From contig OZ320314.1 of assembly GCA_976226885.1 (NCBI GenBank), positions 44,020,001-44,084,000 on the forward strand: a DNA stretch of 64,000 nucleotides, given 5' to 3'. The position numbers and the translations under genes are program-made. The notes below the pieces were generated by a model, which worked only from the letters and a program-made list of their open reading frames with translations, was not told the origin of the DNA and made no database searches. This DNA comes from Iphione sp. A-MEVVRFRX5. Lineage: Eukaryota. Positions 1 through 59,500 of the stretch are shown piece after piece; position 1 is the first letter of the stretch, and each line of letters opens with the position of its first letter.

Positions 1-466
1 GAAGAGGAGTGGGAGGCTGATGACCAGGAGGATGAGGAGGAGACCCAGGAAGAGACCCAGTCCCAGGAAAAGCCTGAGACAACTGATTCTGAAATCCAGG
101 AGATGATGCTCAAAATGAAGAGACACTTTGAGCTGAAGGGAGACCTGAACTGTCTGGAACTGCTGGCACCACTCCAGCAAGCACATTCCACTAGGACAAT
201 AGCTAGGAAAATTGTGCAGCCTACCCTTCATTCATTTTTTAAGAAATGATTTAATATTGTATTTATTGTTGGTTTTGTATTGTGATATTCCATTATGTTA
301 CCTGATTTCACTATATTTCCTATAATAAAGACATATATCTGTATTTCATAGTCTGTGTTCATTCACCATCTCAGGTACTACTCACTGCTTCTACAATCGG
401 GACACTTCCCAAATGCGGACGATTCACTAAAGAACGAAGGGTGTCCGGAATCGGGACGTCCCACTG
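1..466 (+). mobile_element. 3' end of a Tigger/pogo DNA transposon (transposase C-terminus, stop at 247-249, right TIR), truncated by window edge
   Basis: Reads identical by eye to 29038-29503; ends ...GGGACGTCCCACTG followed by TA (467-468); flank differs from the other copy. Confidence 0.93.
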
Positions 467-469
467 TAG

Positions 470-1880
470 TCCCCCTGCTGACCTCCTCAGAGTGGAGCAG
501 GCATCAGTTAAATGGTCAAATTGAGCCAAGGCCAGCAAATCATGAGGGACTGTTTGACAAAGGTCAATGACCTGGGGTGGCCTTTCCTTCTGAAATCATA
601 TCAGCAGAGGGACAAGACTCTCCAGAAGGTCCAAGCAGTGCTCTATTTACGCTCCACTGCTCTTGTCAAGGGTACTCCTTTGCTGATGAAGATGGCTCAA
701 AAGGACCTTTCCCTGCAACTGGTGCTGAATAATTTCTTTGATGTGCTGAGCCGTTACAGAGGCACCAACTACAAGTTAATTAAGGCTTGTTGAAACAATG
801 TCAGTCTTGCGTTGAAAGATAATTACAAGAGGCTGTGATCACCCACCATTGCAGAGGGAGTCATCATTCTGGATTTTCATCCTTCACCTTTTCAGTCACG
901 GATCTTTCCAAGAGGGAATCCATACAAGTCCTTATACATTATTCTGGATTTATCAGAATTTGATAAATTCATGCCCTTTATCCACTTTAAAATATATGTT
1001 CCAGTCAGTATCTCAAACCCTGTACAAAGATTGCTGGATGGCCTCCACGGATCTCTAGAGTTCTTACCATGCTGTAGCTGTGCATCTGGATCATCAGAAA
1101 TACCTAATGTTCTCCTGAAATGCATGGTATTACCAATATGCAGCTATGCCTTTCAGTCTTAAGTTGGCACCAAGACTTCAGCAAGCTGCTAAAGCCACCC
1201 TTAGCCACACTGCATGACAATTTCACTGATGAGGTGTGCTGATTCAGTTTGAGTGCTTACCAACCTTTTCTCTGGCGTGTGTTTGGGATAAATTGGAAGA
1301 AGTTTCCTTCTATTCAAACCCACCATCTGACTTGTCTGGGCTATTGCTTGAATTCATCTTCAATTATGATTACACCTCTTCAATTCAAAATCAACAGGGT
1401 TATCCCTTGTATCAAAGAAGTGCCAGGAGGGGGCTCATCCTCTATCAGGCATGTCACATCCTTAATAGGAACCTTGGTTGACCTAACAAAAGCAGGCCAG
1501 TATGGATTAGTGCACTACAAGGCATTGGGAAAGGGTAAGATTTATGCCTTGATAAAACAGCAGAACTTGGAGGTGCCAGTGACCTTATCCCTACATAGCA
1601 AAGATGACTTAATATGGTGGCTCATAAACATCCATTCCATATGCAGACCTATCAGAGTTCAAGCATGCAGTGAATTCTCAGATTACAGATGCATCCAAGC
1701 TTAGTTTGGACCCTGTCCTGTATTGCTCTGCACTCAAGAATGTTCTCTCCACTGAAAGTTTCGTAGTGGCCAACATTCCCATGTACATCACTCACGTTAG
1801 GGAGGCTGGGCTGGTGTTGGCATTATTATTATTGGCAGGGACTTCAAAGAGTGTTCCCTGTTTGTCTCCAGACAGTTAAT
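470..1880 (+). mobile_element. Decayed DIRS1-type (tyrosine-recombinase retroelement) RT/RNase H relic
   Basis: Broken frames give ILDLSEFDKFMPFIHFK (from 941), DCWMASTDL*SSYHAVAVHLDHQKYLMF, YQYAAMPFSLKLAPR..SKLLKPPL, LIGTL..YGLVHYKAL..DLIWWLINI and ITDAS (about 1685), the motif order of DIRS RT-RNase H; many stops and frameshifts. Confidence 0.75.
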
Positions 1881-1949: not shown

Positions 1950-2330
1950 TGTCTTCCCAGGTTACTCTATTGATTCACTTAATATGATAGTCACTTTTAC
2001 TGTTTATATCGTGGCTAAAGTGGTCTCTCATATATTGAGTCCATCCTCAACCAAGAGGTCAACATCATTACACGGCAAGCCATAGATCAAGGCTTGAAGT
2101 CAGTACATGTATTTTATAATGTGAAGTCGTCCTTCTTAACCAGTGTGACCATGTCTGATGATCATTTCAGGTCGGTAGACTTCGGAGGCATGTGGAGGAG
2201 GTGGCAAGCAGGGAACCCTACATGGGTGAGCAAATGCCAATAAAGTGGTTACGGTTTGAGCAGTCTGTGTCCAAGCTAGTGGATGAAGGGACCTGCTTCG
2301 CCTCACTTGATCAGGTACGGACACTGTGGA
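1950..2330 (-). mobile_element. Possible inverted DIRS fragment (end of pol/MT region)
   Basis: Minus-strand HPLAWTQTAQTVTTLLAFAHPCRVPCLP and MACRV resemble the DIRS 'VP.W.TQ.W..LL...P..LP ... ACR' tract; weak, highly degenerate. Confidence 0.3.
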
Positions 2331-2686
2331 GTTAGATCTCCTGTACCCAGTGTGAAGTTACATAGCAGTATCATTGATTCATTAATTTCAGATTAGGCAT
2401 CGCCAAGCCGTATATAATTAACATACACACATATATCTATATATATAGTAACCCGTAATAGAAAATCCCTCATAGTCATTCTTTCTGTGACTCACCGAAC
2501 TCAAATACATAATAAGCCACCAACTTATATTGTGAATCCCGCCGTTGCTCAAAAATTGGTTTAAAAAATATTGCCATATTATGAGGGATGAATTTAATGT
2601 TCCTGTTTTTCTTTGCGACTAGCTATCTGTCAAACATTTAGACATTTTGAAATTCCTTAACTAGTATATTGTGTAAATAACCACAG

Positions 2687-5658
2687 GTCCGGGAGGTGGC
2701 CAGAGAGGTGGGTATTAACCAGCCGGGCGAGATCTCCACCTTGTTGGAGTTCTACCATGACCTGGGAGTGATTATCTACTATGGAGTAGGCAACACTCTT
2801 GACAGCACCCTGCGAAATACAGTCATTCTTAAGCCACAGTGGCTGGTCGACATGTTCAAACGTATCATCACAGTACGGGACCCGGATCAACAAGTAAGAT
2901 AATAGCTTTTCACCACAACATTGAATCAGTCGAACTTTCCATGGCTTGAGTGTCTGGTGTACTTTTGTGTATATGTGTATCACTCTTCGCTCGTAGGTTT
3001 GTTTGTTGTTGTTGTTTTTAAATTGGGTCATTGCTTGGCCACTAGAGGGCCAATGTAAGATACAGTGGATGAACCACTCATTCATGCGTTTGCTGCCAGC
3101 TGTCGCTGCTAATAATTCGTGATTTCCTCTCTTTCCCAGTGGGGCACCTATCGAGATTTATGGCAGCGTTTGGATACTGTAGGCCTCTTAGAAGAGAAGC
3201 TTATTGACTTTGTGTGGCGGGATGTCATAGAACGGAAGGCTGCCCTGCTTGGCCTGATGGAGAAGTTCGACTTAATCTGTGAACGTCTCACCACGAACAC
3301 AGTACGTGCTGCTGCAAAGTAGTCATAAAAACTCTCTGCTTTCTTCTCATGTTGGTCTCTTCCCCTCTCATCTTCCTATTCTTTATGTTTTTTCCCATAA
3401 GGGATCATGAAACATTACTATAATGTCTCTCCTTGAGCATATAGAGCCTACACAGTGTTGTTTCTCTCTATTCAGACTACACGACGAGCCATAGATCAGG
3501 GCCGTACCTTCTATGTACCATCGCGCCTTCGCAAGTGCCCAGATACACAGCGTCTCTATACACCTAGTGACACGGACGTCATCTTCTATCTAGACTTCAA
3601 CGGTTTCCTGCCAGGTATTATGCTGAGACATTCGATCTTTACGTTGATGAAGGAAATAAATCTACCTCTACCCGAGAATCTCAGGAGTNNNNNNNNNNNN
3701 NNNNNNNNNNNNNNNNNNNNNNNNNNNNNNNNNNNNNNNNNNNNNNNNNNNNNNNNNNNNNNNNNNNNNNNNNNNNNNNNNNNNNNNNNNNNNNNNNNNN
3801 NNNNNNNNNNNNNNNNNNNNNNNNNNNNNNNNNNNNNNNNNNNNNNNNNNNNNNNNNNNNNNNNNNTATGTTGGAGCATCTTTGGTACACGAATTTTGAA
3901 GTATACATTGCACAGCAACTTTGCTAATGCCAACTTTTGCTAATGGCATGTAAATAATTTTTCCTGAAATAATGCATCATTTGCTTGCCCCCCCGACCTT
4001 ACATTATTTCTTGCCTTCTTATTTGTAAGTGCAGGGTATTGTCTTATCTGTCTGTGGGGCCAGTTTTGCATTACTCTGTCTGTCTGGCACCTCCATTTAC
4101 TCACTCTCACTCATTCAGTCCCTCACGTACTCACTGCCTTTCTCACATATTAAAGGAGGAAAGGGTTCTCTCTGCTTTGTTGCATGTAACTTTAACTTTT
4201 TACCATGGGTTACACAAGCCCAAGTTACCCACCCACTACGCAGCTAACCCACACACAACGTAGCTTACTCATCCACTACGCCCCCCCCCCTCCAAGCCAG
4301 GATGATGGCACTGACTGTAGGTTTCTTGTTTGTTTCAATCCTGTCTGTGCATACACGTAGATGGCCTGTTCCATCGTATACTGACTCGCTGTATCAGCTG
4401 GACTGAAGAGAGTGGTGGGCATGAACCTCAGCTCTTCTACCGCAAGGCCAAGTTTTTCCTGGACAGCGAGCATGACTTTGTCCTGGAGATGGCACCAGTC
4501 CAACTGGCCCGGATGAAGGTTAGTAACTCATATAACATGTACATGTATGCAGTTGATACTCCTTTGTTGACAAGGCCTTGGCAGGATGAGTAGTGGATTT
4601 TTATGATCCATGGTTTCTTTTTTCAAGAGATTATTTTTTCGCACGATGCGTTCAACCTTCTGTTTTATATGGTTAGAGATATTTTATGAGAATGAATCAT
4701 TCTGTAAAATCTTGGAGACATGAAAACTGTACTTGAATAGTGTGGTGTGAAACTCCTCTCTCTGTATGTTGTTCTTAAATATCAGTTGTAGATGTACGTC
4801 AATAGAGACAATTATTATGCGCTACTGTCGTAACAAAGACTATAAGTCAGAGTCAGAGCCTTCATCCAGCAACCTGACGAAGACTCTGGAGTTTCGAAAG
4901 ATTGCGATCAATCACTATTCAAGTACATAATAAAGCCAATTGAGTCTTTGAATACACGTTGAGGATTTATTTCCTTGAAGATTCAGGTGGTTGAAATATA
5001 TTATTTTTAACCTTTCTGTTAATTTAATGAACAGAGTGGCCGATATTTTGTTCTTATCGCCGGTCATTGGTATAACTTCGCATTGCACAGCATTTGTATA
5101 TTCTTTACGTGTTTTCTTAACTCTTTCACTGCAGATATCTGTGTTACGTATGGTAGACTTGGATGACAGTGATGAATCGTCTAGTGACGAAAACGAGGAA
5201 AAACCAATGCCCCCACCCAAGCCGGCAGCCTGTGCCAAAGTAAGACCTGTTACACTTTCATGTGCCAAATAGAAAAGTAAAAGCTAACTGGTTCTGATGT
5301 TTTTGTCAAACAGAGGTGATGTTATTTGTTCAAATAATGATAGAGCACACATTTTTTGCCTATAAGTATAGAAACAACACTGTCACCTGCAGTTGCCGGG
5401 GATATAAACATCTACTGAAATAACAGTACAGGAAGATATTACGGTATACATGTATTCTTCATTAAATTTAGAGAAGTCGTCGCAGACAAGCTTTGTGGTT
5501 CTGTGTGGTGCTTCGTGACATGCTGTGATTCTCAACAATGTTAAGAGATAACAGTGGGTCGCCACACCAACATACACTCAGCCTCACACAGTCACACACA
5601 CTGTCTCACCGTCTGTCTGTCTGTTTGTCTGTCTCACTCTCTCTCTCTACATATCACC

Positions 5659-5738
<80 letters not shown>

Positions 5739-8700
5739 CATCATACACACATGGGTACACACGCCGCTGTAGACGTATGGTCGAATTATGTGGTTCCATA
5801 CAAAGACGTGGGTCACTGTGCGATTTTAAAGCCAGCATTAATCCTCAGCTGACGTTGAAGAATTGTCTGTGTCTTACATGCTGTGTCCAATGCTCTTGGC
5901 GCGCTAGGTGAGGAACTTCCTGGAGAATGCGCTGTCGGATCTGCGGGAGCTTTGGATGAAACGCATCTCTTACCGAGCCTCTGTCGACTGCCGCTGCGAC
6001 CGACCGTGCCTGGCGCACGGCCGCGCCCGCTGCCACGAAGAGGAGTGCCTGCATTTCCTCAACCTGGACGAGTGCTTGTCAAACAAGGTCTGGAGCGCAC
6101 CTGATGGCCGATGGCGATGGGATAGAGGGAGGGGGTGTCGTGTGTGTTTTGGGGGACGGGGTGTCGAGAGCGAGAGGACGGAGGATGCTTAGCACGTCTG
6201 GCGGCTCCAGGGAGCAAAGGACAAATATTTGAGTCGATCAGAAATAAGAACCGATTGATTTATGCCGAGTAGTGGCAATAAATCCGCAGCATTCTACCAA
6301 TATTATCGACTTAAAGCGTGATGCTCGAGATCATTTCCTCGGGCTCGACGTAAGTGACCTGAAAGTTGTTTTTTTTCTCAACACAGATCGTCATGTGTGA
6401 CCATCGACGCATCAAAACGGCGCCGTACAGGAAATGGTTTCCAGCGCACGTGCCCACTGGTGAGTGAAGTTAGAGAAACTTTCGCTTACAGGTGTACGTC
6501 TCTTAACGAATCCCGTGGGAATAAAACCTCTTTATGAAAAAGGGTTGGCTTTTTTGGTAGACTTGGTGGCCTGAGGCCGCTTTCTACAAAGCCATTTTAT
6601 AAAGAATTAACTAAAACGAAAGGAAACAAATTCATGTAGCTTCTCAAGTGCAAATTTAATGGTTGATCAAGAAAAATCTATTTAAAACCATTAAAATTAT
6701 GCTAGATATATGTACGTTCGATTAAGAAGTTTCTCACAATGGAGTGACATCATGGAACACCTCTACTTCGTTAACAGAGACACCTGTGACGTCAGCTGTA
6801 TGCCATCTGCATTGTGGAAATCGTCTTATTGAGGCGACGGTTCGATAATAAATTTGGTCGTTTTTTTGTCTTATCTCATACCCCAGATAAAAACTAAGGG
6901 AATATGATCCGCCCTAAAGTATTTAATTTTGTCTATAGTACATTATCTGTTCTAACAAACTTCGTGCACGTTAGTGGGATGCTCACACCATAACTCCTTT
7001 CCCTTTAATAAAAAAAAAAAGGGGGGGACGGTTCTTTCCATCCAGTTAGTACCTCAGATCACAACTGTTCTTCCTGATTCAAACTATCAGTTTTCCCGTT
7101 GATGACCACCATAAATAACTATCCAGCTCGTGTAAAAATTATGTTGGGCAGTCCACTGGATATTTGAATGCAAACTCACTTGTATTGAATGATACATCAG
7201 CAGTTGTCTTCGTTTTTCGATTCCTTCCTAAAGTGACCTCCTGTTTTGTAGCACGGCAGGGCCCTGTGCTCCCCGAGTCGGTTGTGAATGACCCAGCACT
7301 GCTCACCTTCGGTAACATCGAGGCCGCCAAGGGTCATGAGCTGCCTGGCTGGGTGAAGAGCGCCGCAAAACTGCTAAACGGGGGCTCGGAGGGGCAGGAC
7401 TGGACGGCTCTGGCTGAAAAATTAGGTACTCTGCACGAATCATCTTGGTACTCTCTGTGAATCGCCATAGTAATCTGTTCATAAATCCCTATACTATTCG
7501 CTTCATAAATCCCTATTGTATTCTGTGTGAATGACCATGGTATTCTCACGAATCTCACTGATCAAAACATGTTTTTCTGTGAATAGTTTGGGTATGTGAC
7601 ATGATATAAGATGCTATGACTATTTGTAGTTGTGTAGGATGTCATGACACCTGTTAGTAGTTCACTCATTTAAGTTTATCTGATCTCAGAATAGGCCGTC
7701 GTATTATAACCATTGCTTATCTTATTGAGGCTATACGTTTCTCTTGGTTTAATGTAACGTTTGAGACAGACTTCGAAATGGGTTTCCTGATCGGAAAAAT
7801 TTTCTCTCTTGTAGGTTATAAGAAATCTGTAGACAAATTTTCAGAGGACCTGAACCCTGGCTTAGCCTTACTGACGGACTGGATCATCAGTTCAGGCAAT
7901 ACTGCTCTGTCAGTAGATATGATGGTGGCCTGTCTGGAGCAGATGGTGCGAGACGACATTGTCGAAATCATCCAGAAAGGCAGAGGTATACTCATGCTAA
8001 ATCATGTCCGTGTGATTTGGACTATTGTTTATAATGTAATAAATAGATACCATCATGTGGACCAAACCTACTCTTATCAGGAGTGATGTTGAGAAACATA
8101 GCTTCTCGATTCTTGAAAGCGCTTCATTTCTATATTGCGATGCATGTATTTCTAATCAAGTTCATACATAGATGGTTTAGTTTTTGCGAAACAGGTTTGA
8201 GGATGTTCCTCTCCACTATGGTCATAAATGTGACTTTTACAAATTCCACTGAGCTTCGTTGTACTTATACATGTACGTGTTTATCTTATGTGTTTAGTGA
8301 CTGATCTCTTTTATAGACCATTTCCAGTCCCTTGTCCATACAGTCTGTAGTCGCATGCAAAAACACGAATTGACAATAGGGCTTCGAGATGTACCCCTTC
8401 CCCACTGTCTGTAATCACTGCTCGCTAATCATCTGTTGACCTTCTTGTTCTAGAGTCTGAGGTGGCACCTCCACAGGTTTTCATGAGTTACCAGTGGGAT
8501 ACACAGGACGAGGTGAACGCTCTCCGTAACAAGTTAGAGAAACATGGCTTCACCTGCTGGATGGACATAGGACAGATGGGAGGCGGCGATCAGCTGTACG
8601 AGCGAGTCGATCAAGCCATCCGTAATGCTAAGGTGGGTCCTCTTATTAAAAGTATAGAGTCTAAATCACGCTGACGCAGAGGAAGTTTGCAAGAAGATAC

Positions 8701-10013
8701 CAGCCCTAAGGAGCTAAGGGCGCAGACCTCCTTCATTGACAGCAAGGTAGAGAGCATGCTGGTCGCAGTGGTAGAAGATGGGGGAAGAGGTACTTATTGC
8801 ACAAGTAAAGTTCCACACCCAGTTATTTACACCCCTTTCTCCGTCGCTGGATTTTAATATAAGTGATCGACTCCGTTGAACAGTGGGAGCTGAGCCTGGC
8901 CGACCCGCCTAAGACGAACTTTGATCTTTACAGATTGTGATATGCTGCATCACACCCAAGTATGTGACGTCTCATTACTGCCAGCGGGAGCTTAGCTTGG
9001 CTGACCTGCTGAGAAAACCCATCATTCCCGTCATGTACGAGAAGGTGCCCTGGCCGCCACCAGGGGGAATGGCGCTTATTGTCTCCCAGCTGGTCTATAT
9101 CAACATGAAGGGTAAGCTGATTCTACGGATTGACAATGAATTAATACCTCGGCGCTGAAATGCTACGAATAAGCTTCGATTTTGTAGCTTAATAGAGGAA
9201 AGGATAGGACAGGAGGGTTTGTCTTAATTGGAAGCAGCATAAGGAAGAATAACAATCTGTCCCCAATGGACCGATCGCCAGCGGCGAAAGAAATGGGTAG
9301 TGCGGACGTTTTTACTTGTCACGAAAATGTTGCAATTTTAAGCCTTTTGATTGGTCCATTCAATGATTTCATCAGGCAGAAACACAGGGTCACATGTAAT
9401 TGAATACAATTTGGTGACCGTTAACATTTTCATCTTGAAATAAGTGCTTGCTGGAATAATACGTCTGCCAATAGTATTGAATATATTTTTGAACAAATTT
9501 GTGTTATTCAGTTAAATATTTTGTCTGCATTTGTTCACCTGTACATCGTGCACATTTTCCCAGTTACGCTACATAGCTTTGTTTTGACCATCTCTAGGAG
9601 TAGGAGGACATGGAGGCTCAGGCATCCACGCTGACCTGGAGAGTAAGTACCAGGAAATTATGCAGCGTGCTGCCTGTTTCGCCACCCCGGATCCACATGC
9701 GTCTCTTGACTCCACTGTCGACAATGCCCATCCGCGCACATTCCGTGCCGACTCCATGTCGCTGGGCAGTCCAGATGCCTCGATGAGGGAGCCGCTCATC
9801 ATTGGTGCTTACAGCACGGGGCTGAGCGCCGGTGGGCGGCGGGCGCGCGGCCCGGCTGGCCCGGGCGGCAACGCGCCTGGCCCGATGGAGGGAGGCGGCG
9901 GTGGTGTTAACAATGATGAGGCGCAACAAAGCGGCAGCGAGGGAGGAGACGGCAGCCCGCGTCATGTGGAGCAGGTGCACGTCACGAAGTGTGCCGTATG
10001 CTGCATTCTGTAA
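2687..10013 (+). CDS. Roco-family protein, 3' part: COR domain, Cys/His-rich linker, Death domain, TIR (TIR_2-like) domain, C-terminal CaaX; 5' exons (presumed Roc GTPase) outside window
   Basis: Phase-consistent AG/GT exons: 2687-2893, 3140-3301, 3476-3614, 4361-4518, 5135-5239, 5908-6087, 6387-6459, 7252-7425, 7815-7985, 8454-8632, 8934-9111, 9598-10013. Motifs: LLEFYHDLGVIIYY..VILKPQWLVDMFKRII and LLGLMEKFDLIC, FYVPSRL (COR); DWTALAEKLGY..LLTDW..LEQMVRDDIVEII (Death); VFMSYQWD..FTCWMDIGQMGGGDQLY..YCQRELSLADLLRKPIIPV (TIR); ends KCAVCCIL*. Confidence 0.88.
3689..3866. other. Assembly gap (N run) in intron
   Basis: Run of n characters. Confidence 0.99.
5630..5735. repeat. (CT)n microsatellite, intronic
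   Basis: Long ctctct run. Confidence 0.97.
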
Positions 10014-13000
10014 CGTACTGACTGTGATATATTGGAGGAGCTGTCTCATTGTTAATCCACCACTGCCGCACTAGCAGTATGTCCGTCCCCACAGGCACAC
10101 CCGGTCTGTACCACACATGTAGATATACATACAAATGTACTTATTTTGTAGTAGGGTGACCGCACTATGGTGTTTGCTCACGTGTGCAATAGACATGCCC
10201 GAGGCTATGACGTGTCATAATTTCCAAAAAAGGCATACATCATAAAAAAAATACATCATAATAATATGATTACATGAATAGACTATTTTTGTGCACTTGA
10301 CATTTACAAAAAATGACCCGACCTAATCTCCTGTGGTATATTTGTTGATGGCTCAGGTCTATAGTCCTTATCTTTATACACTCAACTCTCCTAAATGCAG
10401 ACAACCTTCGTTTTTACCCAAATCGTCCGCATTTTAGACATGTCCGGTTTACAGATCTATTAGTAGACTGTAGAAAATGTATTTGTGAATGGACGATGAC
10501 AACAAAGGAGTAAACTTATGATTGAGTCCTGAAAGTGCTGAATTTGACAAATAAAATTCATAAAAGAGATTAATTTGACAAACAAATGTCAATAAAGTGC
10601 AGAATTTGACAAGTAGAAGTCCTAAATTTGAGAAAAAAGAGACCCAAATGTGCGCAACAACACGCTGTCTACAAGGAGTATTGATGTCAACCTTTGGAAA
10701 AGCCTTCCCACATACCAAAATCAGCGAGACAACACGTAGTCCATAGGTGGGCATTCAAGTAAACCTGTGGCAATGACGTCTGAGGCTTGAATTCCCCTAA
10801 TATCACTATGACGACATTGTGTCCACAGCAAGATGCTCCCCCAAATTTCCTGTCCTCACTAGAGACATCTCGCTATATAGATTATGTATTGAAGCGAAAT
10901 GGGTTCTTTTGTAAATTGTCCACGTTTCAGATGGGACCACATTATGGGCATGTGCATAGGGAGAGAGTCGACTGTATTTAGATACACATGTACGGGTTGT
11001 GCAGCATAATCTATGTGCATGTTTGTAAAGACATGCAGTGGTTGTTCTTTGATTCAACACATTCTGTAATGCCCATACACATTAGGCCTATTTGAGCGGA
11101 CGGCTTGCCGTCTCTGCAGGTGTTTGTGAAGGGGTGCCTGTGTGATGCACGTTCGATAGGGAAAGAGCCGGTTGCCTTTTTTAAGGTCAGTTTTTTGCGC
11201 ATTCCTACAGCTGAGTAGCCACATTTTAAATCAGTTTGCTTCATTAAACAAAAACAGAATTCACAGTGACCATTTATTTGCTTTTGAACATATGTGAACG
11301 GAGTCACCTGGTGATGATATATGAAGTGATAAAGCTGGTGTCGAGTCTAATAGAATTGTCAGATAATGGGTGAATTTCGAATGTGAGAATGCAGTGGAGC
11401 GGGGTTGGGTAGTGTGGAAATGGATGTGACGAAGACCGTGTTGTCAATGCGTATGTCCGTCTCTAGCGACGTTGATGGATCTGTGGATGTTAAACGTCAA
11501 TGCGTCTTCTGCCCCAAACTGGAGAGGAGTGAAAGAGTGACGGTGACAGACAGACATGGAGATCCACCCTCATCTACCTGTACGATTGGAATTTCAGTAT
11601 ATGGAGTGACGGACACACGGAAAAAGTCCCAACTCAAATAGGTTTGAATATTTGATGACTGGGACCGTTGGTTGGCCAAACAAAACTTATAAACTCATAA
11701 AACATTTGGTCACTTCGGATCCTCAGTTGTGATTCTTATTATTAAAGGTTTCTTGTCATATGTAATATTTTATGTGCGGTACACTATTGGATAATTTTCT
11801 TGATATTGTGTTGATTGTGCCAATGGTGATGCTGCTTCTTTACGCGATGAAAAACCCAGGTTGGCTTCTGCTTGGTTCACCGGCTTAGGTAGAGTTAAAT
11901 TTAAGTGTTCGATGTCATTTTTATTCATGTAATTATTACAATGTTCATGAATTATTCCTGTCATTAGATGAGACAGGGAAACTGTTCTCATCGGAACTTA
12001 TGGGTAAGCTAATGTATGGTCACGAATGCACATTGTGGGGTGCAGTGTAGGATCATACTGCACTCGGTAAGATTGAGTTAATACTGCTGTCTGTGTTTTT
12101 ACACCGTCGCACAGTATTCATAAATGGTTTGCTTTACACCAGATTATCAATTTGGGGTGGGGGTGGATTTAATTCAGATTAAATAAATCGTCCAAATACC
12201 CTGAAACACCACATCCTGGACAGACTATTTGGCATACCTGACCATATAGTGAACAGCTTGAGAACAACCGCGTTGTACTTTGTGTTATACATGTGCTTAG
12301 CAGTCCCATCGAATTTGTTGATATTTCCAATAAGCTAGGAAACTGTCATGTAATGCAGAAGAGGCCGACGTAGATATGAGATCAAAATTTGAATATTAGT
12401 CACCATAACCCAAAGCGTTATGAAGGAAAGGATAGGAAAAGCATGGGGGCAGTGTTTTCCAGAATAACTATTTAAGTCACTGTCCACAAGGTACGCTCAG
12501 GAAAAGGAACGGTTCAAAGACCTAGCTCTAATTGTCAAGTAGATTGAAACAAAAGGGGCGAAGAATTTGTTTTTGTTGTCAGTGTCTTCAAACATGTTCA
12601 GTAAATCTTTCTGATCGCCATTGGTTTAAAACAGGTATTGTGGACGTCACTTTTACTTAATTGTGACACTGTCCAAAAATTATTATTTCCTTTATTAGGA
12701 AATTGCTGTTTCAGGAATGTTAAAGTACCGGTTCTGGTGTTCATAAATAATGTATTATTCGAATGCCTTGGTCCACAGCCAGTCCTGTTTAAAGGTAACA
12801 TTTCTGCTGGTGTGACTTTCCTGTGTATACTTAGTTGTACCATCTTGGGGGGGGGGAGGGGGGCGCGAATGCTAGTGCGTGACCCACTGATCACCCATGA
12901 GGACATTTTGATCCACTGACTTTTGAACCAATATAAATGTACACATATGTATGGCTATGACGTGTACATTCCTTGTTTCCTGTGGACACATGCTCCTATC

Positions 13001-27217: not shown

Positions 27218-29503
27218 CAGGGGAACGTCCCCTCGCGGACACTTCTGGAATGCGGACGCCTCTACAATGCGGACGGTTCAGCGCAGAACGAAACGATTTT
27301 CTATACTTAAGCATTATGAGCTGACGTCTCCATTCCGGACATCCGATTTCAGAGAACGTCTGCCTGCGGACGGCGACAGTCGTACCCCCCGAGCCGACTC
27401 AAAGTTGAATTCTTCAGATCACCACGCGAATTTTACACCTCACGGACCCCCTTGGGCCCCGTGCCTTTGATTTAGCGTCAGCTAACGGCAAAATTCGACA
27501 CCTAGGGCGACTCAATGGGGTTGTGCGAATTGCAATCGTCACCTCCAGGGCTTGGACGGTCTCAAGACAACACACCAAAGGATGAGTTTCTGTCTGATCT
27601 GCTCACACGTTGCTAATTGCAATTGTCACCTCCTGGGCTTGGCGGGCTCCAGGACCATACATAAGGGGGTCGATTTCGGAGAGGAGGCATCATTCTGTGG
27701 ACGATTCGCAAGACGACAACATGCCTACCCCCAGCAAGACCCTCACCAAGCGCAGAGATCTGACTCTCCGAGAAAAGGTGGATGTCATAAAGAACAGCTC
27801 GAACAAGAGTCTTCGTCAACTCGCAGAGCAGTTTGGGGTTGGCAAGACCCAGGTCGGCTCAATCTTGAAACGCAAGGCGGATATCATGCTTGACTATGAG
27901 AAATGTGCTGATCCCACTGCTAAACGCCGATGCCTTTCCACAACTTCAACCAGCCTGGACGAAAAAGTGTTCTCCTGGTTCTCCAGGATGCGTTCACTCA
28001 ATTGCCCAGTGTCGGGGCCTATGCTATGCACCAGGGCATTAAAAGTATCCAAAGAGTTATCAATGGACGATTTCAAGGCCTCAACCGGTTGGCTACATAA
28101 GTTCAAGAAACGACACTGCATCGGCGGGTTCAAGGTCGTTGGTGAAAAGGCAAGCGTTGACGAGACGACAGTTGAAAACTGGCTGGAGCGTCTGCCTACT
28201 ATCCTCCAGGGTTACGAGGCCAGAGACATATTCAACGTGGATGAATCTGGCCTTTTTTACCGTGCTCTCCCAGACAGGACCCTGAGCGTGAGAGGTTCAG
28301 ATGTCTCTGCTACGAAAAAGTCCAAGGAGCGTATCACTGCAATGTTCTGTGTGAATATGCTAGGAGAATTCCAGAAGACCCTGGTTATTGGTAAAGCTGC
28401 CAGACCCAGATGCTGGAGGAATGTAAAGGACCTTTCAAGCCTGCCTGTTGTTTGGAGGAACAACAAGAAAGCCTGGATGACCTCTGGTCTATTTGAGGAA
28501 TGGCTCCATTCCTTCAATAGGAAAATGAAGAGCCAGGGTAGGAAGGTCTGCCTTCTCATGGACAATGCCCCATCACACCCAGGAGGCATTGAATTGAGCA
28601 ATGTGAAGGTTGCTTTCCTTCCCCCCAATGCCACCTCTGTACTGCAGCCCCTGGACCAGGGGATCATCCAGGCAGTCAAGCTTCAATACAGAAAGTCCCT
28701 GCTCCAGTATGTGATCTCCCGCCTGGATGAAGAAAATGACCCCAAAGCAGTCATTGGCTCTGTTGACATGCAGATGGTGGTTTCCTGGCTGCATGCAGCA
28801 GTGAAGGCTGTGAAGCCCTCCACAGTGGAGGCCTGCTTCATCAGGTCAGGGATCAAGGCAGTACCTGATGGTGATGAAGAGACTCAGGTTGCTCTCCTCA
28901 GAAGTCCACCAGAACTGGATGATGAGCCCCTCCTCTCATTGCTGACCAAGATCCAGGAGGGTATCCCTGAGGAGACCAGGATGAGTCCTGAGGAGTACAG
29001 GACTGTGGACCAAGATCTACCAACACACAGCCTGGATGAAGAGGAGTGGGAGGCTGATGACCAGGAGGATGAGGAGGAGACCCAGGAAGAGACCCAGTCC
29101 CAGGAAAAGCCTGAGACAACTGATTCTGAAATCCAGGAGATGATGCTCAAAATGAAGAGACACTTTGAGCTGAAGGGAGACCTGAACTGTCTGGAACTGC
29201 TGGCACCACTCCAGCAAGCACATTCCACTAGGACAATAGCTAGGAAAATTGTGCAGCCTACCCTTCATTCATTTTTTAAGAAATGATTTAATATTGTATT
29301 TATTGTTGGTTTTGTATTGTGATATTCCATTATGTTACCTGATTTCACTATATTTCCTATAATAAAGACATATATCTGTATTTCATAGTCTGTGTTCATT
29401 CACCATCTCAGGTACTACTCACTGCTTCTACAATCGGGACACTTCCCAAATGCGGACGATTCACTAAAGAACGAAGGGTGTCCGGAATCGGGACGTCCCA
29501 CTG
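27218..29503 (+). mobile_element. Intact Tigger/pogo (Tc1/mariner superfamily) DNA transposon, 2286 bp, inserted in env
   Basis: TA TSD 27216-17 and 29504-05; imperfect TIRs CAGGGGAACGTCCC / CAGTGGGACGTCCC; repeated (GC/CC)GGAC subterminal motifs. Confidence 0.95.
27721..29286 (+). CDS. Tigger/pogo transposase (CENP-B-like HTH plus DDE_1), 521 aa from the ATG at 27721
   Basis: Uninterrupted ORF; LTLREKVDVI, SLRQLAEQFGVGKTQV, FKASTGWLHKFKKRH, FNVDESGLF, LLMDNAPSH, QPLDQG; acidic tail. Confidence 0.93.
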   Translation: MPTPSKTLTKRRDLTLREKVDVIKNSSNKSLRQLAEQFGVGKTQVGSILKRKADIMLDYEKCADPTAKRRCLSTTSTSLDEKVFSWFSRMRSLNCPVSGPMLCTRALKVSKELSMDDFKASTGWLHKFKKRHCIGGFKVVGEKASVDETTVENWLERLPTILQGYEARDIFNVDESGLFYRALPDRTLSVRGSDVSATKKSKERITAMFCVNMLGEFQKTLVIGKAARPRCWRNVKDLSSLPVVWRNNKKAWMTSGLFEEWLHSFNRKMKSQGRKVCLLMDNAPSHPGGIELSNVKVAFLPPNATSVLQPLDQGIIQAVKLQYRKSLLQYVISRLDEENDPKAVIGSVDMQMVVSWLHAAVKAVKPSTVEACFIRSGIKAVPDGDEETQVALLRSPPELDDEPLLSLLTKIQEGIPEETRMSPEEYRTVDQDLPTHSLDEEEWEADDQEDEEETQEETQSQEKPETTDSEIQEMMLKMKRHFELKGDLNCLELLAPLQQAHSTRTIARKIVQPTLHSFFKK

Positions 29504-30333
29504 TAATAATATGTGGGCAAGGACATCTCATCCCCGACAGCTCCACATCCGTTGGGTAGTTTCACTAAGGCGAAGGGAGCTGGAACGTTATGACGGTACA
29601 TGCTGCCGTTAACACACTGTATTCTCATGGCCAACGTGACCGGAGTGGTCACCACCCAATTACCTTGATCTAAGTACTTGGCTTGGGGCATAGTTAGCCC
29701 ACTCATGATGGTACGCGTACAAAGGGAGGACACCCGTTTGACCTCTTGCTGGTAAATAGCGAGAACGCAATATGAATGCAAATTGAGTTCGTACACAGGA
29801 GATGACACTAAACAGGAGTCTTCCTGTAGTCGACAGTGAACAAGTTCTTCTGGCGTGACAATGGCATAACGACGTCGGTCGCTGGTTATGCCAAAATATT
29901 TGAACTCCAAGTCAAATTGAATAGCACGTCCATCGGCCATCGGGACGGGAATGTTCACTGCTTCATAGATAGTGTACGAAGCTACCGGGTCTGTTAACGG
30001 TATAGTTATGGAGGTTATGATACGTCCCTCGAAAATAACCGTGGTGGCAGATAGTGCACTATAGTAGCTCCACACGTCAGTCACCTGATAGGGCAACCGT
30101 AGCTGAGATGGCAATTGGTGCTCTATAGTCATGAGGATACCCCTAAGTTCATTAGCTGGGATGACCTCGGGAGTCAATCATCCGCCTAGAAGATGATTGA
30201 TACGGGCCTCCAATTTGGACACCGAAGTTTCCCACGCGTCCAACCGGTACTCGTATCGTGAGTAAAACCGCTCGGCATTGAGGATGCCATGTATATGGCG
30301 TATTTCCCGAGTAGTGATATTGCTCATGACATG
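29504..30333 (-). pseudogene. env: env, central ectodomain segment
   Basis: HVMSNIT..LLGG*LTPEVIPANEL..LPSQLRLP..YY..ITIPL..YTIYEAVNIPVP..C..C..SPVY..C; one TGA at 30178-80; frame joins both neighbours once insertions are removed. Confidence 0.85.
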
Positions 30334-56500: not shown

Positions 56501-59500
56501 ACAGTTACCTTGTGTTGCTTTTTTTTTTTTTAATTCCAAAGCAAGCATTCCAACAAAACGTGGTCACTACAGCCTAAGAATGTCTACAGTGAGCAAGATA
56601 ACTATTCTTACATGGTTAGGAGTGACAAACGTGTACTGGCAATGTCCCGGCGACCCTTCTTAAACTCCAGACCCATAACTTGAATAAATTACTGAGTTGT
56701 AGTTCACTGAATAAGGAGAAGTCGTTAATAGGATTTCCTTGAATCTGATTGGAGGAGACAGGTCACATGACTTAGAACTCTCTAAGATGGCGGTTTCTTT
56801 TCGAAAAGTAAGCAAGGAACCTGCCGTCAGCATCCTATACTTCCAAGGCTCAAATTACCACTTTTCATGGTCGGATTTTAATGATTTACATATCAAATCA
56901 AAGTTTATGACATCTATTGCATTTATAATAACAATATCAGAACTGCGATTAACAATTTTATTTCGTGCTGGGTGAAAAGTTTAGTCATGACGCTTAAGGG
57001 CTGGGACTGGATCCCAGCCTGAGAAAAGTGACTAAGCCTTTTGACCCAGCACTTAATGCCATCGTTAATCGCGTAGGCGCAGTCAAAATTCCTTCCAACA
57101 TGACTCGTTGGCCTCATTTAAGCATCAGGCAAACAACTGTTTTAATATTTCTCCATTTTTCGTAACTATCATCTTTAAACAGGCATAAAGCGGGAGTCCA
57201 CACGAGCACATTCTGTGTATATTTCCGTGCTCTGGGTCTCCTAGTCTCGGTAGGAAGGGAGCCACAAGAACTGGCATCCCGTCACCTGACAGAGGCAGGG
57301 GACTTTAAGATCAAGTTGGTTACATACTGTGACCTGTTCAAAAAGGGAGATGGGGCTTGAAGGTTCGTATCAGACGGGTGGAATGGGTAGCCGGCTAGTG
57401 AGGGTTCACTGTATCTGTGTGCATTATGAAGGCGGAAAACTCAGAAACATACCTCGGTAGTGGATTGGGTAGATGCCACGATGCAGATGAAGCTGGCGGG
57501 CAACCTGTGGGAAGCGAGTGACAGCTATGATGGGACAACGGGGCCGGTAGGCAGCCAGTAACTGTGCAGACCTGCAATGGTAGAGACAGATAACAGAAAA
57601 TAATCCTCACTGTGGTTGTATTTTGACTGGCCTAGTGGTTAAACTATGGGAAGAGAGTGATAGCTAAGGTGTGACCGTGGGCGAGTACGCAGGCAGCAAC
57701 CATGCAAATCTGCAATGGAGCAGGCCTCTGCGGTACATGTACATGTATTCTAAAGAGTTGGAGTTCGGGAAACAAGCGACAGTGACAATGGGGCATCAGG
57801 GCTGCTAGCCAAGCAGCTACTGTGCAGAATGGTGAAATACCCCGACTGATGGACCAGGTGGTTAAACTGGGACAAGTATTTAACGGCTATGCCAATAAAA
57901 ATCAGCACACGCTCTAACGGGTGGTGTATTCTGCTACAGCCTGCATCACAACTCGCAAAACATTTTAGTATAGATTGAGAAGAGATATTTATCAAAAAAG
58001 TCAACAGTATCACTCTAAAGAGCTTATAGCGAGAAATCATCTTGGTCAAATTCCCACAAATTGGAACCGGTTCCGTAATAGTTTTATGATCGCTAATACT
58101 TTTGTGAAGGGAATAAATGCAATGTAAGGAGCCTGTATGCATCTGTATTACAAATAAATACACCCAGGAGTCCAAGGAAGAACAAGGTGACGTTAAAATA
58201 TATCCGAAGTCGAAAAACTCTGAATTTTTTCCTCACCTCCTGGATGTACTGACATACTTCTCTTAATAAATCCTCTGAGCCCGAAGTTCTTTAATTATGA
58301 AGTAGGTAAACCCTCTGATAAGTACTGTGACGTGCAGTGAACAGATTAAATCAAATTGACAACTCATTCTACCCCTAATAACAAAATTTCTAATAACTAT
58401 GAAATGTGTCTTCTTTACAGCACTGAGTTACGGCAGCTTTGAATCAATCTGGACTTTTTGAATCAAACATAAAACAAATATATATTTATTTTACTTGCGC
58501 ATAGTTAAGAATCCATTGTATTATTAAGCAATGAGTAATTCGTTATGGCCATTGTGATTTCGTTTCCCACATCAGTAGAAATACCGGTTTGATCCTATGA
58601 AAATAACACATTTATTTTGGGGAATGGCCACTACACCTGTAAATTTCCGTCCTAAAAAATACCTTCGTGGTTATTTGCTTCAGTAGTACATAGTATGTAT
58701 TTCTTAGATGACAAGTATTATCATCATGTATGTTAAACAGTTGAATAAGTCAGCTTCGTAACTGCCATACAATCACAAACTGGGGGATCACAAGGACAGT
58801 GATGTTACTGGCTCGTCAGAGGGCGCCACGTAATAATGCGGGCATGAGCGCAACTGACAGTTCCCGGTGTTTATTAAAACTCACGAGAGACCGCTACAGC
58901 TTTGAGGGAACCTAGTGCAGCCACATCTGGGGCTTCTCACCTAGGTTAAGTGCCTACATGCTACAGTNNNNNNNNNNNNNNNNNNNNNNNNNNNNNNNNN
59001 NNNNNNNNNNNNNNNNNNNNNNNNNNNNNNNNNNNNNNNNNNNNNNNNNNNNNNNNNNNNNNNNNNNNNNNNNNNNNNNNNNNNNNNNNNNNNNNNNNNN
59101 NNNNNNNNNNNNNNNNNNNNNNNNNNNNNNNNNNNNNNNNNNNNNNNNNNNNNNNNNNNNNNNNNNNNNNNNNNNNNNNNNNNNNNNNNNNNNNNNNNNN
59201 NNNNNNNNNNNNNNNNNNNNNNNNNNNNNNNNNNNNNNNNNNNNNCGGCGGCACTGGAAGACTGATGGAAGAGGACCAGCGCGATATGACTGCCTACCTT
59301 TTCTATACTAACAAGCGCATTTGGCGCAATCTACACATGAAATCTCGCAATATTCCAACCATTACACTGGGTAGCACAACTTTCAGGCAACGTTTGATAA
59401 AAGCAGTGTAATCAACAACAAGCTCCTATCCAATCCCCATTTAACAGCATTAAGATGTTGAAAACTTGGCAGCCCGGTGAGCCTTATCCTGTTGATATCG

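What the first reader, a model, noticed from the sequence alone, without database searches (positions are those of the whole stretch)
2687..10013. Roco protein with COR-Death-TIR and a prenylation signal: candidate membrane-anchored innate-immunity NADase switch
Seen: the spliced product runs COR, a Cys/His cluster (CRCDRPCLAHGRARCHEEECLH..C..CDH), a Death domain, a TIR that keeps a Glu in YCQRELSLA, a Gly-rich disordered tail and KCAVCCIL*. Known: COR follows a Roc GTPase and mediates dimerisation; SARM1, plant and bacterial TIRs need a helix-C Glu and self-association for NAD+ cleavage; CaaL motifs are geranylgeranylated and nearby Cys are often palmitoylated. Inference: a GTP-regulated, lipid-anchored Death/TIR signalling or NADase protein. 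I do not recall a characterised protein with this architecture.
Basis: partly seen in the sequence, partly recalled or inferred. Interest (0 to 1): 0.75.

Follow-up and report, generated by a model that had tools for sequence, protein, structure and literature searches.

The report
Prenylated ROCO GTPase with Death-TIR output
The finding is the 3' two-thirds of an intact, single-copy animal gene for a 1307-residue G-protein (NHR-Roc-COR-Death-TIR, with a lipid-anchor signal at the end). It belongs to an uncharacterised family conserved across invertebrate phyla, which could link a GTPase switch to SARM1-type TIR signalling at membranes.

Summary
Window 2171-10013 (+) holds 13 of the 21 GT-AG exons of an uninterrupted 1307-aa ORF. 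The other 8 exons lie up to 26.8 kb upstream and encode a Neuralized-type NHR domain and the Roc GTPase. The assembly gap (3689-3866) lies inside intron 12, and orthologue residues abut across it. About 100 orthologues share the architecture NHR-Roc-COR-Death-TIR_2. They come from molluscs, annelids, nemerteans, rotifers, a priapulid, chelicerates, myriapods, echinoderms, hemichordates and amphioxus. All are labelled "uncharacterised". No vertebrate, insect or nematode protein was hit.

In an 82-sequence alignment:
- 72 of 73 intact C-termini end in CaaX (66 with Leu), and 65 read CxxCaaX.
- The TIR Glu is invariant and aligns with SARM1 E642.
- Seven Cys and two His are conserved in at least 77 of 82 rows, and the predicted structure places them inside the COR-B fold.

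The TIR resembles enzymatic TIRs (Cat1, AbTir, SARM1) more than TLR or MyD88 TIRs. The Death domain is p75NTR/NRADD-like.

A GTP-regulated, lipid-anchored Death/TIR protein is well supported. NADase activity is plausible but untested, and an immune role is speculative. The architecture was already drawn in an Aplysia in-silico survey, so this is a new member of a catalogued but unstudied family.

The parts
2171..2314 (+). Exon 9 (aa 547-594): end of Roc / start of COR-A (…MPIKWLRFEQ…).
   Evidence: tblastn colinear with P0017 residues 563-612 at 58% identity; AG/GT borders
2687..2893 (+). Exon 10 (aa 595-663): COR-A
   Evidence: Pfam COR-A PF16095, E 1.1e-12
3140..3301 (+). Exon 11 (aa 664-717): COR-A, C-terminal part
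   Evidence: Pfam COR-A weak hit, E 0.072; 51% identity to P0017 residues 684-732
3476..3614 (+). Exon 12 (aa 718-764): start of COR-B; ends in phase 1
3689..3866 (.). Assembly gap (N), lying wholly inside intron 12 (3615-4360). No coding residues are missing across it.
   Evidence: P0017 residues 743-788 and 783-840 abut across it; the joined frame reads NGFLPDGLFHRIL
4361..4518 (+). Exon 13 (aa 764-816): COR-B
   Evidence: predicted fold matches LRRK1, LRRK2 and CtRoco COR
5135..5239 (+). Exon 14 (aa 817-851): acidic/Ser-rich loop inside COR-B (ISVLRMVDLDDSDESSS…PAACAK)
   Evidence: matches the same variable segment ending P.ACA[KQR] in orthologues
5908..6087 (+). Exon 15 (aa 852-911): COR-B C-terminal part with most of the Cys/His cluster (C879, C881, C885, H888, C893, C898, H900, C907; codons 5989-6075)
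   Evidence: single copy in the genome; 60 homologues found with this exon alone; these residues conserved in 77-82 of 82 rows
6387..6459 (+). Exon 16 (aa 912-936): end of the cluster (C915 at 6396-6398, H917 at 6402-6404; IVMCDHRRIKT)
7252..7425 (+). Exon 17 (aa 936-994): linker and first half of the Death domain
   Evidence: family profile hits NRADD and p75NTR Death domains, E 5.6e-12
7815..7985 (+). Exon 18 (aa 994-1051): second half of the Death domain
   Evidence: Pfam Death PF00531, E 1.7e-4; six helices in the AF2 model of the orthologue
8454..8632 (+). Exon 19 (aa 1051-1110): TIR strand A through the BB loop (VFMSYQW…WMDIGQMGGGD)
   Evidence: Pfam TIR_2, E 2.2e-11; PDB best hits PdTIR, AbTir, SARM1
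8934..9111 (+). Exon 20 (aa 1111-1170): TIR second half. The invariant Glu E1129 is codon 8988-8990, in SHYCQRELSLADLL.
   Evidence: Pfam TIR_2, E 7.9e-9; Glu present in 79 of 79 rows that have a residue; aligns with SARM1 K641-E642
9598..10013 (+). Exon 21 (aa 1170-1307 plus stop): conserved GVGGHGGSG loop and last TIR helix, then a ~100-aa Gly/Ala/Ser/Pro-rich linker, then KCAVCCIL*. The CaaX Cys is codon 9999-10001 and the upstream Cys is 9990-9992.

Best explanation
The span is the C-terminal two-thirds of this animal's apparently single-copy orthologue of a conserved, uncharacterised ROCO family. The domain order is: NHR (Neuralized homology repeat), Roc GTPase, COR-A, COR-B carrying a conserved Cys7His2 cluster, a p75NTR/NRADD-like Death domain, a SARM1/bacterial-type TIR with the catalytic-position Glu, a disordered linker, and a C-terminal CxxCaaL.

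Shown here: the gene structure, the domain identities, the conservation of the motifs and the phylogenetic spread.

Inferred mechanism:
1. GGTase-I geranylgeranylates the CaaL Cys. The Cys three residues upstream is probably palmitoylated. Together they hold the protein on a membrane.
2. The NHR domain, very close to Neuralized NHR1, binds a short motif in a partner, probably a membrane-protein tail.
3. The Roc-COR module acts as a nucleotide-dependent dimerisation switch, as in other ROCO proteins. The Cys/His cluster probably binds zinc and stiffens the COR-B part.
4. The switch sets the proximity or oligomeric state of the Death and TIR domains.
5. The output is TIR self-association. I judge this somewhat more likely to drive NAD+ cleavage (SARM1/bacterial type) than pure adaptor scaffolding. 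The Death domain recruits further partners.

Whether the pathway serves immunity, stress or cell death, or development is open.
For: Gene model: 21 GT-AG exons, 1307 aa, no internal stops. It is colinear with orthologues from end to end.

Domains:
- NHR: Pfam E 9.9e-40; Drosophila Neuralized NHR1 structures at E 8e-37.
- Roc: motifs G211/K217/T218 and D400/G403 are conserved. Roc-COR matches MbRoco2, CtRoco and LRRK2.
- COR-B plus Cys/His region: the AF2 model (pLDDT 87, pTM 0.83) superposes on LRRK1, LRRK2 and CtRoco COR over about 200 of 217 residues.
- Cys/His residues: each present in 77-82 of 82 rows.
- Death domain: nearest to NRADD and p75NTR, E 5.6e-12.
- TIR: the family profile hits Cat1 at 5e-9, bacterial TIR NADases, and SARM1 at 1.6e-7, against TLR1 at 1e-3, with no MyD88 TIR at E 0.01 or better. 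The Glu aligns with SARM1 E642.
- Foldseek: top hits are SARM1, SPARTA TIR-APAZ, TIR-1 and AbTir.

Lipid-anchor signal: CaaX in 72 of 73 intact C-termini, with X = L in 66 and CxxCaaX in 65.

Family: about 100 orthologues in more than 10 phyla share the same Pfam set. Full-length uninterrupted ORFs sit on 4-6 kb Logan contigs, for example P0103 on a 5.8-kb contig, which are most simply transcripts.
Against: - No RNA or DNA sequencing run could be listed for this locus. Expression and the exon model therefore rest on orthologue colinearity.
- Lipidation, zinc binding, GTP binding, dimerisation and NAD+ cleavage are all untested.
- The G4 motif reads THRN, not TH.D (N in 42 rows, D in 25 of 82). 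Guanine specificity may therefore differ from classic Roc domains.
- The aromatic residue four positions before the Glu (SARM1 W638) is not conserved here (L, H, S or Y).
- SARM1 R569/R570 correspond to Q and W in this family.
- A conserved Glu at this position also occurs in non-enzymatic TLR TIRs (my knowledge).
- The homodimer prediction for COR-B gave no verdict.
Confidence: 0.7

Rival explanations
1. The protein is the same, but the TIR is a non-enzymatic adaptor. It would act as a MyD88-like bridge, in which TIR-TIR contacts with TLR/IL-1R-type receptors and Death-Death contacts with IRAK/Pelle-type kinases relay a signal. Roc-COR and the lipid anchor would only position it.
For: - Death-then-TIR order as in MyD88.
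- The Aplysia in-silico survey files a ROCO-domain protein (LOC101861518) among its MyD88-like proteins, and its Fig. 6 legend lists NHR, ROC, COR, Death and TIR.
- The aromatic residue equivalent to SARM1 W638 and the Arg pair R569/R570 are not kept.
- MyD88 and TLR TIR structures also appear among Foldseek hits with similar TM-scores.
- TLR TIRs keep the same Glu without known NADase activity (my knowledge).
Against: - The family TIR profile scores enzymatic TIRs 3-5 orders of magnitude better than TLR TIRs, and does not reach MyD88 TIR at E 0.01 or better.
- The BB loop (WMDIGQMGGGD) lacks the Pro typical of TLR/MyD88 BB loops (the motif knowledge is mine).
- The Death domain is nearest to NRADD and p75NTR (5.6e-12), with MyD88 at only 2.5e-6.
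- The Glu is present in 79 of 79 rows.
Confidence: 0.3
2. The protein works as inferred at the membrane, but in a conserved developmental, neuronal or cell-death pathway rather than in pathogen sensing. One example would be signalling downstream of Notch-ligand-like tails bound by the NHR domain.
For: - The Cys/His exon is single copy in a 1.18-Gb genome, and database orthologues are mostly one gene per species.
- Identity is 44-58% to full-length orthologues from other phyla, and the terminal motif is conserved. This is unlike fast-evolving, expanded immune receptors.
- The NHR is almost as close to Neuralized NHR1 as a paralogue would be (E 8e-37).
- Its nearest Death and TIR relatives (p75NTR/NRADD, SARM1) act in neuronal death signalling (my knowledge).
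Against: - There are no expression or functional data of any kind.
- TIR, Death and SPRY-like domains are also hallmarks of immune signalling (PMC8195603).
- Invertebrate-wide TIR families absent from vertebrates have been proposed as immune adaptors (PMC6321704).
Confidence: 0.4
3. The span is an annotation artefact: a pseudogene, a chimera of two genes (NHR/Roc upstream and COR-Death-TIR downstream), or a wrong last exon.
For: - A 19.3-kb and a 12.8-kb intron full of repeats separate the upstream exons.
- An assembly gap lies inside the span.
- No RNA evidence exists for this species.
Against: - All 21 exons are in frame, with GT-AG borders and no stop.
- Order and content match 1240-1320-aa orthologues from end to end.
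- The gap is intronic.
- The C-terminal octapeptide matches orthologues from other phyla almost letter for letter.
Confidence: 0.03

Closest known systems
NHR-ROC-COR-Death-TIR proteins noted in silico in Aplysia californica (PMC9334734, Fig. 6; ROCO-domain 'MyD88-like' LOC101861518), and the ~100 database orthologues labelled 'uncharacterized protein', 'neuralized PATS1' or, wrongly, 'non-specific serine/threonine protein kinase'
   Same: Same Pfam set and order (Neuralized, Roc, COR-A, Death, TIR_2), similar length (about 1240-1320 aa) and the same C-terminal CxxCaaL.
   Different: Nothing structural: the window gene is an orthologue. I did not see the Aplysia sequence itself; other gastropod orthologues were compared. 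The held papers I read or searched do not mention the lipid-anchor signal, the Cys/His cluster or the catalytic-position Glu.
Cnidarian kinase-(SH3)-Roc-COR-Death-TIR proteins (NG3 of PMC5094078; Nematostella LOC5519167, Calliactis A0A1D8RAC4)
   Same: Roc-COR-Death-TIR_2 core. Identity is 28-31% over about 85% of the COR-to-end query region.
   Different: They have an N-terminal protein kinase (and SH3) instead of NHR, and no CaaX at the C-terminus.
DAPK1 (vertebrate ROCO)
   Same: Roc-COR followed by a Death domain. This is established domain knowledge, not tested here.
   Different: DAPK1 has a kinase, a calmodulin-binding segment and ankyrin repeats, and no NHR, TIR or CaaX. No kinase domain was found in this family.
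SARM1 / C. elegans TIR-1
   Same: TIR_2-type TIR. The Glu aligns with E642, and SARM1 and TIR-1 are among the top structural hits.
   Different: SARM1 is regulated by ARM and SAM domains and forms an octamer. Here the regulators are NHR, Roc-COR and Death plus a lipid anchor. The equivalents of W638 and R569/R570 differ.
MyD88
   Same: A Death domain directly followed by a TIR.
   Different: MyD88 Death scores 2.5e-6 against 5.6e-12 for NRADD. MyD88 TIR is not hit at E 0.01 or better. This protein also carries about 930 residues of sensor/switch domains upstream and a CaaX.
LRRK1, LRRK2 and Chlorobium tepidum Roco COR-B
   Same: The predicted fold superposes over about 200 residues, with query-normalised TM-scores of 0.47-0.59.
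   Different: This family carries a conserved Cys7His2 cluster in the C-terminal part of COR-B. I know of no such cluster in LRRK or CtRoco; that rests on my knowledge and was not tested.
Drosophila Neuralized
   Same: The NHR domain is very similar to NHR1 (E 8e-37; PDB 2yue, 4kg0).
   Different: One NHR only, and no RING E3 domain.

Membership tests
ROCO proteins | Roc (Ras-of-complex) GTPase domain with P-loop and DxxG motifs | tested here: met
   GQDRVGKTS and WDFAGQ lie in upstream exons. The motifs are conserved in 73-81 of 82 rows. Pfam Roc gives E 2.2e-5 on one exon and 1e-10 to 1e-16 in most full-length orthologues.
ROCO proteins | COR domain directly after Roc | tested here: met
   Pfam COR-A, E 1.1e-12. 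The COR-B fold matches LRRK1, LRRK2 and CtRoco.
ROCO proteins | G4 guanine-specificity motif (N/T)(K/H)xD | tested here: inconclusive
   This protein reads THRN. The last position is N in 42, D in 25 and S in 5 of 82 rows.
TIR NAD+ hydrolases (SARM1 / bacterial / plant type) | TIR fold | tested here: met
   Pfam TIR_2 on both exons. AF2 model of the orthologue has pLDDT 86.5. Foldseek hits to SARM1 and AbTir have target-normalised TM-scores of 0.69-0.78.
TIR NAD+ hydrolases (SARM1 / bacterial / plant type) | Glutamate at the catalytic position (SARM1 E642) | tested here: met
   Profile-to-sequence alignment puts the family 'RE' on SARM1 'KE' (K641-E642), on the Glu of Cat1 'WCWDEL' and on the Glu of AbTir 'NYEL'. 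The Glu is present in 79 of 79 rows. Window codon 8988-8990.
TIR NAD+ hydrolases (SARM1 / bacterial / plant type) | NAD+ cleavage that depends on TIR self-association | not testable with these tools
   Needs an enzyme assay.
CaaX prenylation substrates (GGTase-I class) | Cys at position -4 from the C-terminus, with Leu as the last residue | tested here: met
   …KCAVCCIL followed by the stop. 72 of 73 intact orthologue C-termini are CaaX, and X = L in 66.
CaaX prenylation substrates (GGTase-I class) | Actual lipid modification and membrane localisation | not testable with these tools
   Needs metabolic labelling and mutants.
MyD88 family | Death domain followed by TIR | tested here: met
MyD88 family | Death and TIR domains closest to MyD88's | tested here: not met
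   Death domain: NRADD/p75NTR at 5.6e-12 against MyD88 at 2.5e-6. TIR: MyD88 is absent at E 0.01 or better, while SARM1 scores 1.6e-7.
Neuralized E3 ligases | NHR domain | tested here: met
   Pfam PF07177, E 9.9e-40; Neuralized NHR1 structures at E 8e-37.
Neuralized E3 ligases | C-terminal RING finger | tested here: not met
   No RING family in Pfam scans of 8 full-length orthologues, nor in the window exons scanned.
DAPK1-type ROCO | Kinase and ankyrin repeats N-terminal to Roc-COR-Death | tested here: not met
   No kinase or ankyrin hit. The N-terminus is an NHR domain.

The most novel reading that the evidence does not exclude
The family is a GTPase-gated, geranylgeranyl-anchored TIR NAD+ hydrolase. 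It would be an invertebrate counterpart to SARM1 in which a ROCO G-domain and a zinc-stabilised COR-B dimer, rather than ARM/SAM domains, control TIR assembly. An NHR domain would read a membrane-protein motif as the trigger. It would be the first ROCO protein with an enzymatic TIR output and the first lipid-anchored animal TIR enzyme.
Probability: 0.3. Interest if true: 0.8.

Novelty: new member of a known kind. Interest (0 to 1): 0.55.

Why it matters
ROCO G-proteins (LRRK2, DAPK1) and TIR NADases (SARM1) are each central to neurodegeneration and cell-death research, yet no studied protein joins the two. This family does so in one polypeptide. It is conserved from amphioxus and echinoderms to molluscs, annelids, rotifers and chelicerates, and no vertebrate, insect or nematode protein appeared among the hits.

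Three conserved features give direct, cheap experimental handles: the CxxCaaL end, the Glu at the catalytic position, and a Cys7His2 cluster in COR-B. If the TIR is active, the family would show a new way to gate NAD+ destruction, by a GTPase switch on a membrane. It would also offer a simpler model for how Roc-COR controls an output domain.

If the TIR is only an adaptor, the family is still an unexplored and widespread branch of invertebrate Death/TIR signalling.

Tried and rejected
- Sequencing runs for the locus. A search for RNA runs on 8400-10400 and a search for any run on the last exon both listed none. Read laying could therefore not be used, and expression in this species is untested.
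- COR-B homodimer prediction (complex prediction, 2 copies of the A2 first sequence). The result was 'no answer', score 0.00. It is not evidence either way.
- Whole spliced product in Pfam, structure or homology tools. I used single exons and the closest orthologues (P0103, P0017) as proxies. The 3D models are therefore of an orthologue (P0103, 58% identical overall), not of this protein.
- PDB search with the second TIR exon alone: no hit. The family profile was needed.
- The idea that window 1-246 is the end of an upstream gene that would exclude a Roc domain. Rejected: bases 1-468 are a dispersed repeat with about 40 copies listed.
- The idea of a separate zinc-finger domain between COR and Death. 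Rejected: the cluster is modelled inside the COR-B fold. I could not inspect model coordinates, so the geometry of the putative metal sites is unverified.
- Gerdol et al. 2017 (Dev Comp Immunol), which classifies invertebrate 'ecTIR-DC' families and may already number this one. It is not held in the library.
- Literature searches for TIR plus geranylgeranylation plus NADase, and for TIR-DC plus ROCO: no papers.


Full report
**What is there.**
On the + strand, stop-free segments between 2162 and 10013 carry COR-A, Death and TIR_2 signatures. The window lies at G000:C2:44020001-44084000 of a 1.18-Gb animal genome. Window bases 1-468 and 855-1710 are dispersed repeats. So the ORF end at 246 is not an upstream gene that would exclude 5' exons.

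I fetched 60 kb upstream. It holds an NHR exon, a P-loop exon (…LVGQDRVGKTSL…) and further Roc exons (…NIWDFAGQ…, …IVGTHRNS…).

Exon pieces cannot reach full-length relatives in the word search, because of its length filter. I therefore spent the one exhaustive search on the 60-aa Cys/His exon, which is single copy in this genome. It found 60 homologues, a dozen of them over 1000 aa.

**Gene model and the gap.**
tblastn of the orthologue P0017 (1305 aa) against the 72-kb locus gives 21 colinear pieces covering residues 2-1305. Choosing GT-AG borders that keep the frame yields 21 exons, 3924 nt and 1307 aa with no internal stop.

Thirteen exons lie in the window: 2171-2314, 2687-2893, 3140-3301, 3476-3614, 4361-4518, 5135-5239, 5908-6087, 6387-6459, 7252-7425, 7815-7985, 8454-8632, 8934-9111 and 9598-10013.

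The assembly gap 3689-3866 is inside intron 12 (3615-4360). The flanking exons join as …DFNGFLP-D-GLFHRIL…, exactly as in the orthologues, and orthologue residues 743-788 and 783-840 abut. No coding sequence is hidden in the gap.

**The family.**
Pfam on eight full-length homologues gives the same set each time: Neuralized (NHR), Roc, COR-A, Death and TIR_2. They come from starfish, octopus, a nemertean, a centipede, a freshwater mussel, a tick and a snail. All are labelled 'uncharacterized', or carry the automatic misnomer 'non-specific serine/threonine protein kinase'.

A word search with P0017 residues 560-1305 lists 124 hits. About 100 of these are orthologues with this architecture. They come from gastropods, bivalves, cephalopods, a chiton, annelids (Owenia, Paralvinella), nemerteans, bdelloid rotifers, Priapulus, ticks, spiders, mites, Limulus, myriapods, an ostracod, echinoderms, hemichordates and amphioxus. 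No vertebrate, tunicate, insect or nematode protein is among the hits.

More distant relatives are cnidarian kinase-(SH3)-Roc-COR-Death-TIR proteins. These are NG3 of the actiniarian study, which reported it as novel (PMC5094078). There are also separate Death-TIR proteins in amphioxus, molluscs and rotifers.

The window protein is closest to an unnamed transcript-like contig (P0103, 58%), then Owenia (57%) and Lineus (53%). This suggests an annelid-like lophotrochozoan.

P0103 is an uninterrupted 3.8-kb ORF on a 5.8-kb Logan contig. For a gene that has 21 exons in the window genome, that is most simply an mRNA. In relatives, therefore, the full architecture, including the last exon, is probably transcribed.

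**Conserved motifs (82-row alignment).**
- *C-terminus.* Of 73 sequences with an intact tail, 72 end in CaaX (X = L in 66, I in 5, F in 1). Sixty-five read CxxCaaX, and six pteriomorph bivalves read CxCaaX. Ours is KCAVCCIL. Amphioxus has KCGACVIL, starfish KCVVCSIL, a tick RCSVCSLL and rotifers SCTVCSIL. This conservation across phyla, next to an otherwise unalignable linker, is strong evidence for a functional geranylgeranylation signal with a second, probably acylated, Cys.
- *TIR.* The Glu of CQRELSLA is present in all 79 rows that have a residue. The BB-loop segment WMDIGQMGGGD, the WPPPG motif and the loop GVGGHGGSG after the last strand are also nearly invariant.
- *Cys/His cluster.* C879, C881 and H900 are present in all 82 rows. 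C885, H888, C893, C898, C907 and C915 are present in 77-81. H917 is His in 52 rows and otherwise Tyr or Phe.
- *Roc.* G1 and G3 are intact. G4 reads THR[N/D], with N in 42 rows (including ours) and D in 25.

**Domain affinities.**
- The NHR exon hits Drosophila Neuralized NHR1 structures at E 8e-37.
- Roc-COR hits MbRoco2, CtRoco and LRRK2.
- An AF2 model of COR-B plus the Cys/His region of P0103 is confident (pLDDT 87, pTM 0.83). It superposes on the COR of LRRK1, LRRK2 and CtRoco over about 200 of 217 residues. The cluster therefore decorates COR-B rather than forming a separate zinc finger.
- The Death-TIR model (pLDDT 86.5) shows a six-helix bundle followed by a TIR whose last helix follows the Gly-rich loop.
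- The Death domain is nearest to NRADD and p75NTR (5.6e-12), with MyD88 at 2.5e-6.
- The TIR profile hits Cat1 (5e-9), bacterial TIR NADases (1.7e-8 to 2e-7) and SARM1 (1.6e-7). Hydra TRR-2 scores 4e-6, TLR2/15 6e-5 and TLR1 1e-3. MyD88 TIR does not appear at E 0.01 or better.
- In those alignments the family Glu sits on SARM1 E642 and on the Glu of Cat1 'WCWDEL' and AbTir 'NYEL'.
- Foldseek ranks SARM1, SPARTA TIR-APAZ, TIR-1 and AbTir first, though MyD88 and TLR TIRs follow with similar TM-scores.

**How it most likely works.**
Shown: the architecture and the conservation.

Inferred from established knowledge of the parts:
- CaaL proteins are geranylgeranylated by GGTase-I, and a nearby Cys is commonly palmitoylated.
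- ROCO proteins use Roc-COR as a nucleotide-dependent dimerisation switch that controls an output domain.
- NHR1 of Neuralized binds short NxxN-type motifs in membrane-protein tails.
- TIR NADases need self-association and the Glu.

Put together, the protein is a membrane-tethered switch. Its NHR reads a partner, and its Roc-COR state sets Death/TIR assembly. I rate the enzymatic (NADase) output at roughly 40% and a pure adaptor role at roughly 30%, with the rest undecided. Against the enzyme reading: the W638 and R569/R570 equivalents differ, and TLR TIRs keep the Glu too.

The 'innate immunity' label is the weakest part. The gene looks single-copy and slow-evolving, unlike expanded invertebrate immune receptors. 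Its nearest domain relatives (Neuralized, p75NTR, SARM1) are developmental or neuronal.

**Comparison with what is known.**
- No member has been characterised.
- The architecture has been drawn once, in the Aplysia in-silico immunome. Its Fig. 6 legend lists NHR, ROC, COR, Death and TIR, and the text files a ROCO-domain protein among the 'MyD88-like' proteins (PMC9334734).
- Invertebrate-wide TIR families absent from vertebrates have been grouped as 'ecTIR-DC' (PMC6321704). The source classification, Gerdol 2017, could not be read.
- I found no paper linking TIR domains with geranylgeranylation.

The window gene is therefore a new member of a catalogued but unstudied family. The conserved CaaX, the COR-B Cys/His cluster, the catalytic-position Glu and the p75NTR-like Death domain appear to be new observations about that family.

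**Limits.**
- No sequencing run could be listed for this locus.
- The spliced protein itself could not be submitted to the tools, so the structures are of an orthologue.
- The dimer prediction gave no verdict.
- I could not inspect model coordinates for metal-site geometry.

Noticed in passing
window 1-468: Dispersed repeat, with about 40 copies at 73-100% identity listed across at least 10 chromosomes, including an identical copy at window ~29038-29505. Its ORF ends …IVQPTLHSFFKK*, which resembles a C-terminal PIP-box (QxxLxxFF). It is probably the end of a transposon-encoded protein.
   Followed up: partly
window 855-1710: A second dispersed repeat, with copies at 71-78% identity elsewhere in the genome, lying in the intron upstream of exon 9.
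   Followed up: no
upstream exon at G000:C2:44016112-44016297 (L006:6112-6297): The Roc G4 motif reads GTHRN, not GTH.D. Asn replaces the guanine-specifying Asp in 42 of 82 family members and Asp is kept in 25. In Ras-like GTPases, Asp-to-Asn at this site shifts specificity towards xanthine nucleotides (my knowledge), so nucleotide preference may be unusual.
   Followed up: partly
window 9598-9650 (aa 1170-1187): The nearly invariant loop GVGGHGGSG-x-HADLE lies between the last TIR strand and the last TIR helix. Its letters fit a GxGxxG pattern and include a conserved His. SARM1 has a functionally important His (H685) in the corresponding loop (my knowledge). The alignment did not reach this region.
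   Followed up: no
one search hits P0144-P0174 (amphioxus, Nucella, Patella, Lymnaea, rotifers): A separate family shares the Death-TIR_2 module (33-41% identity over about 30% of the query), combined with other domains (Pfam PF24161, PF01582). This suggests the Death-TIR pair is a mobile cassette in invertebrates.
   Followed up: no
introns upstream of the window (C2:43960001-44020000) and window 5640-5760: The 12.8-kb and 19.3-kb introns are packed with gag/RT-like ORFs and (CAGA)n, (CT)n and (CA)n microsatellites.
   Followed up: no
window 58968-59245: A second assembly gap (278 N), outside the gene.
   Followed up: no
database annotation of orthologues: Many UniRef entries of this family are named 'non-specific serine/threonine protein kinase', although no kinase domain is detectable. 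This is likely rule-based mis-annotation carried over from LRRK/DAPK-type ROCO proteins.
   Followed up: partly
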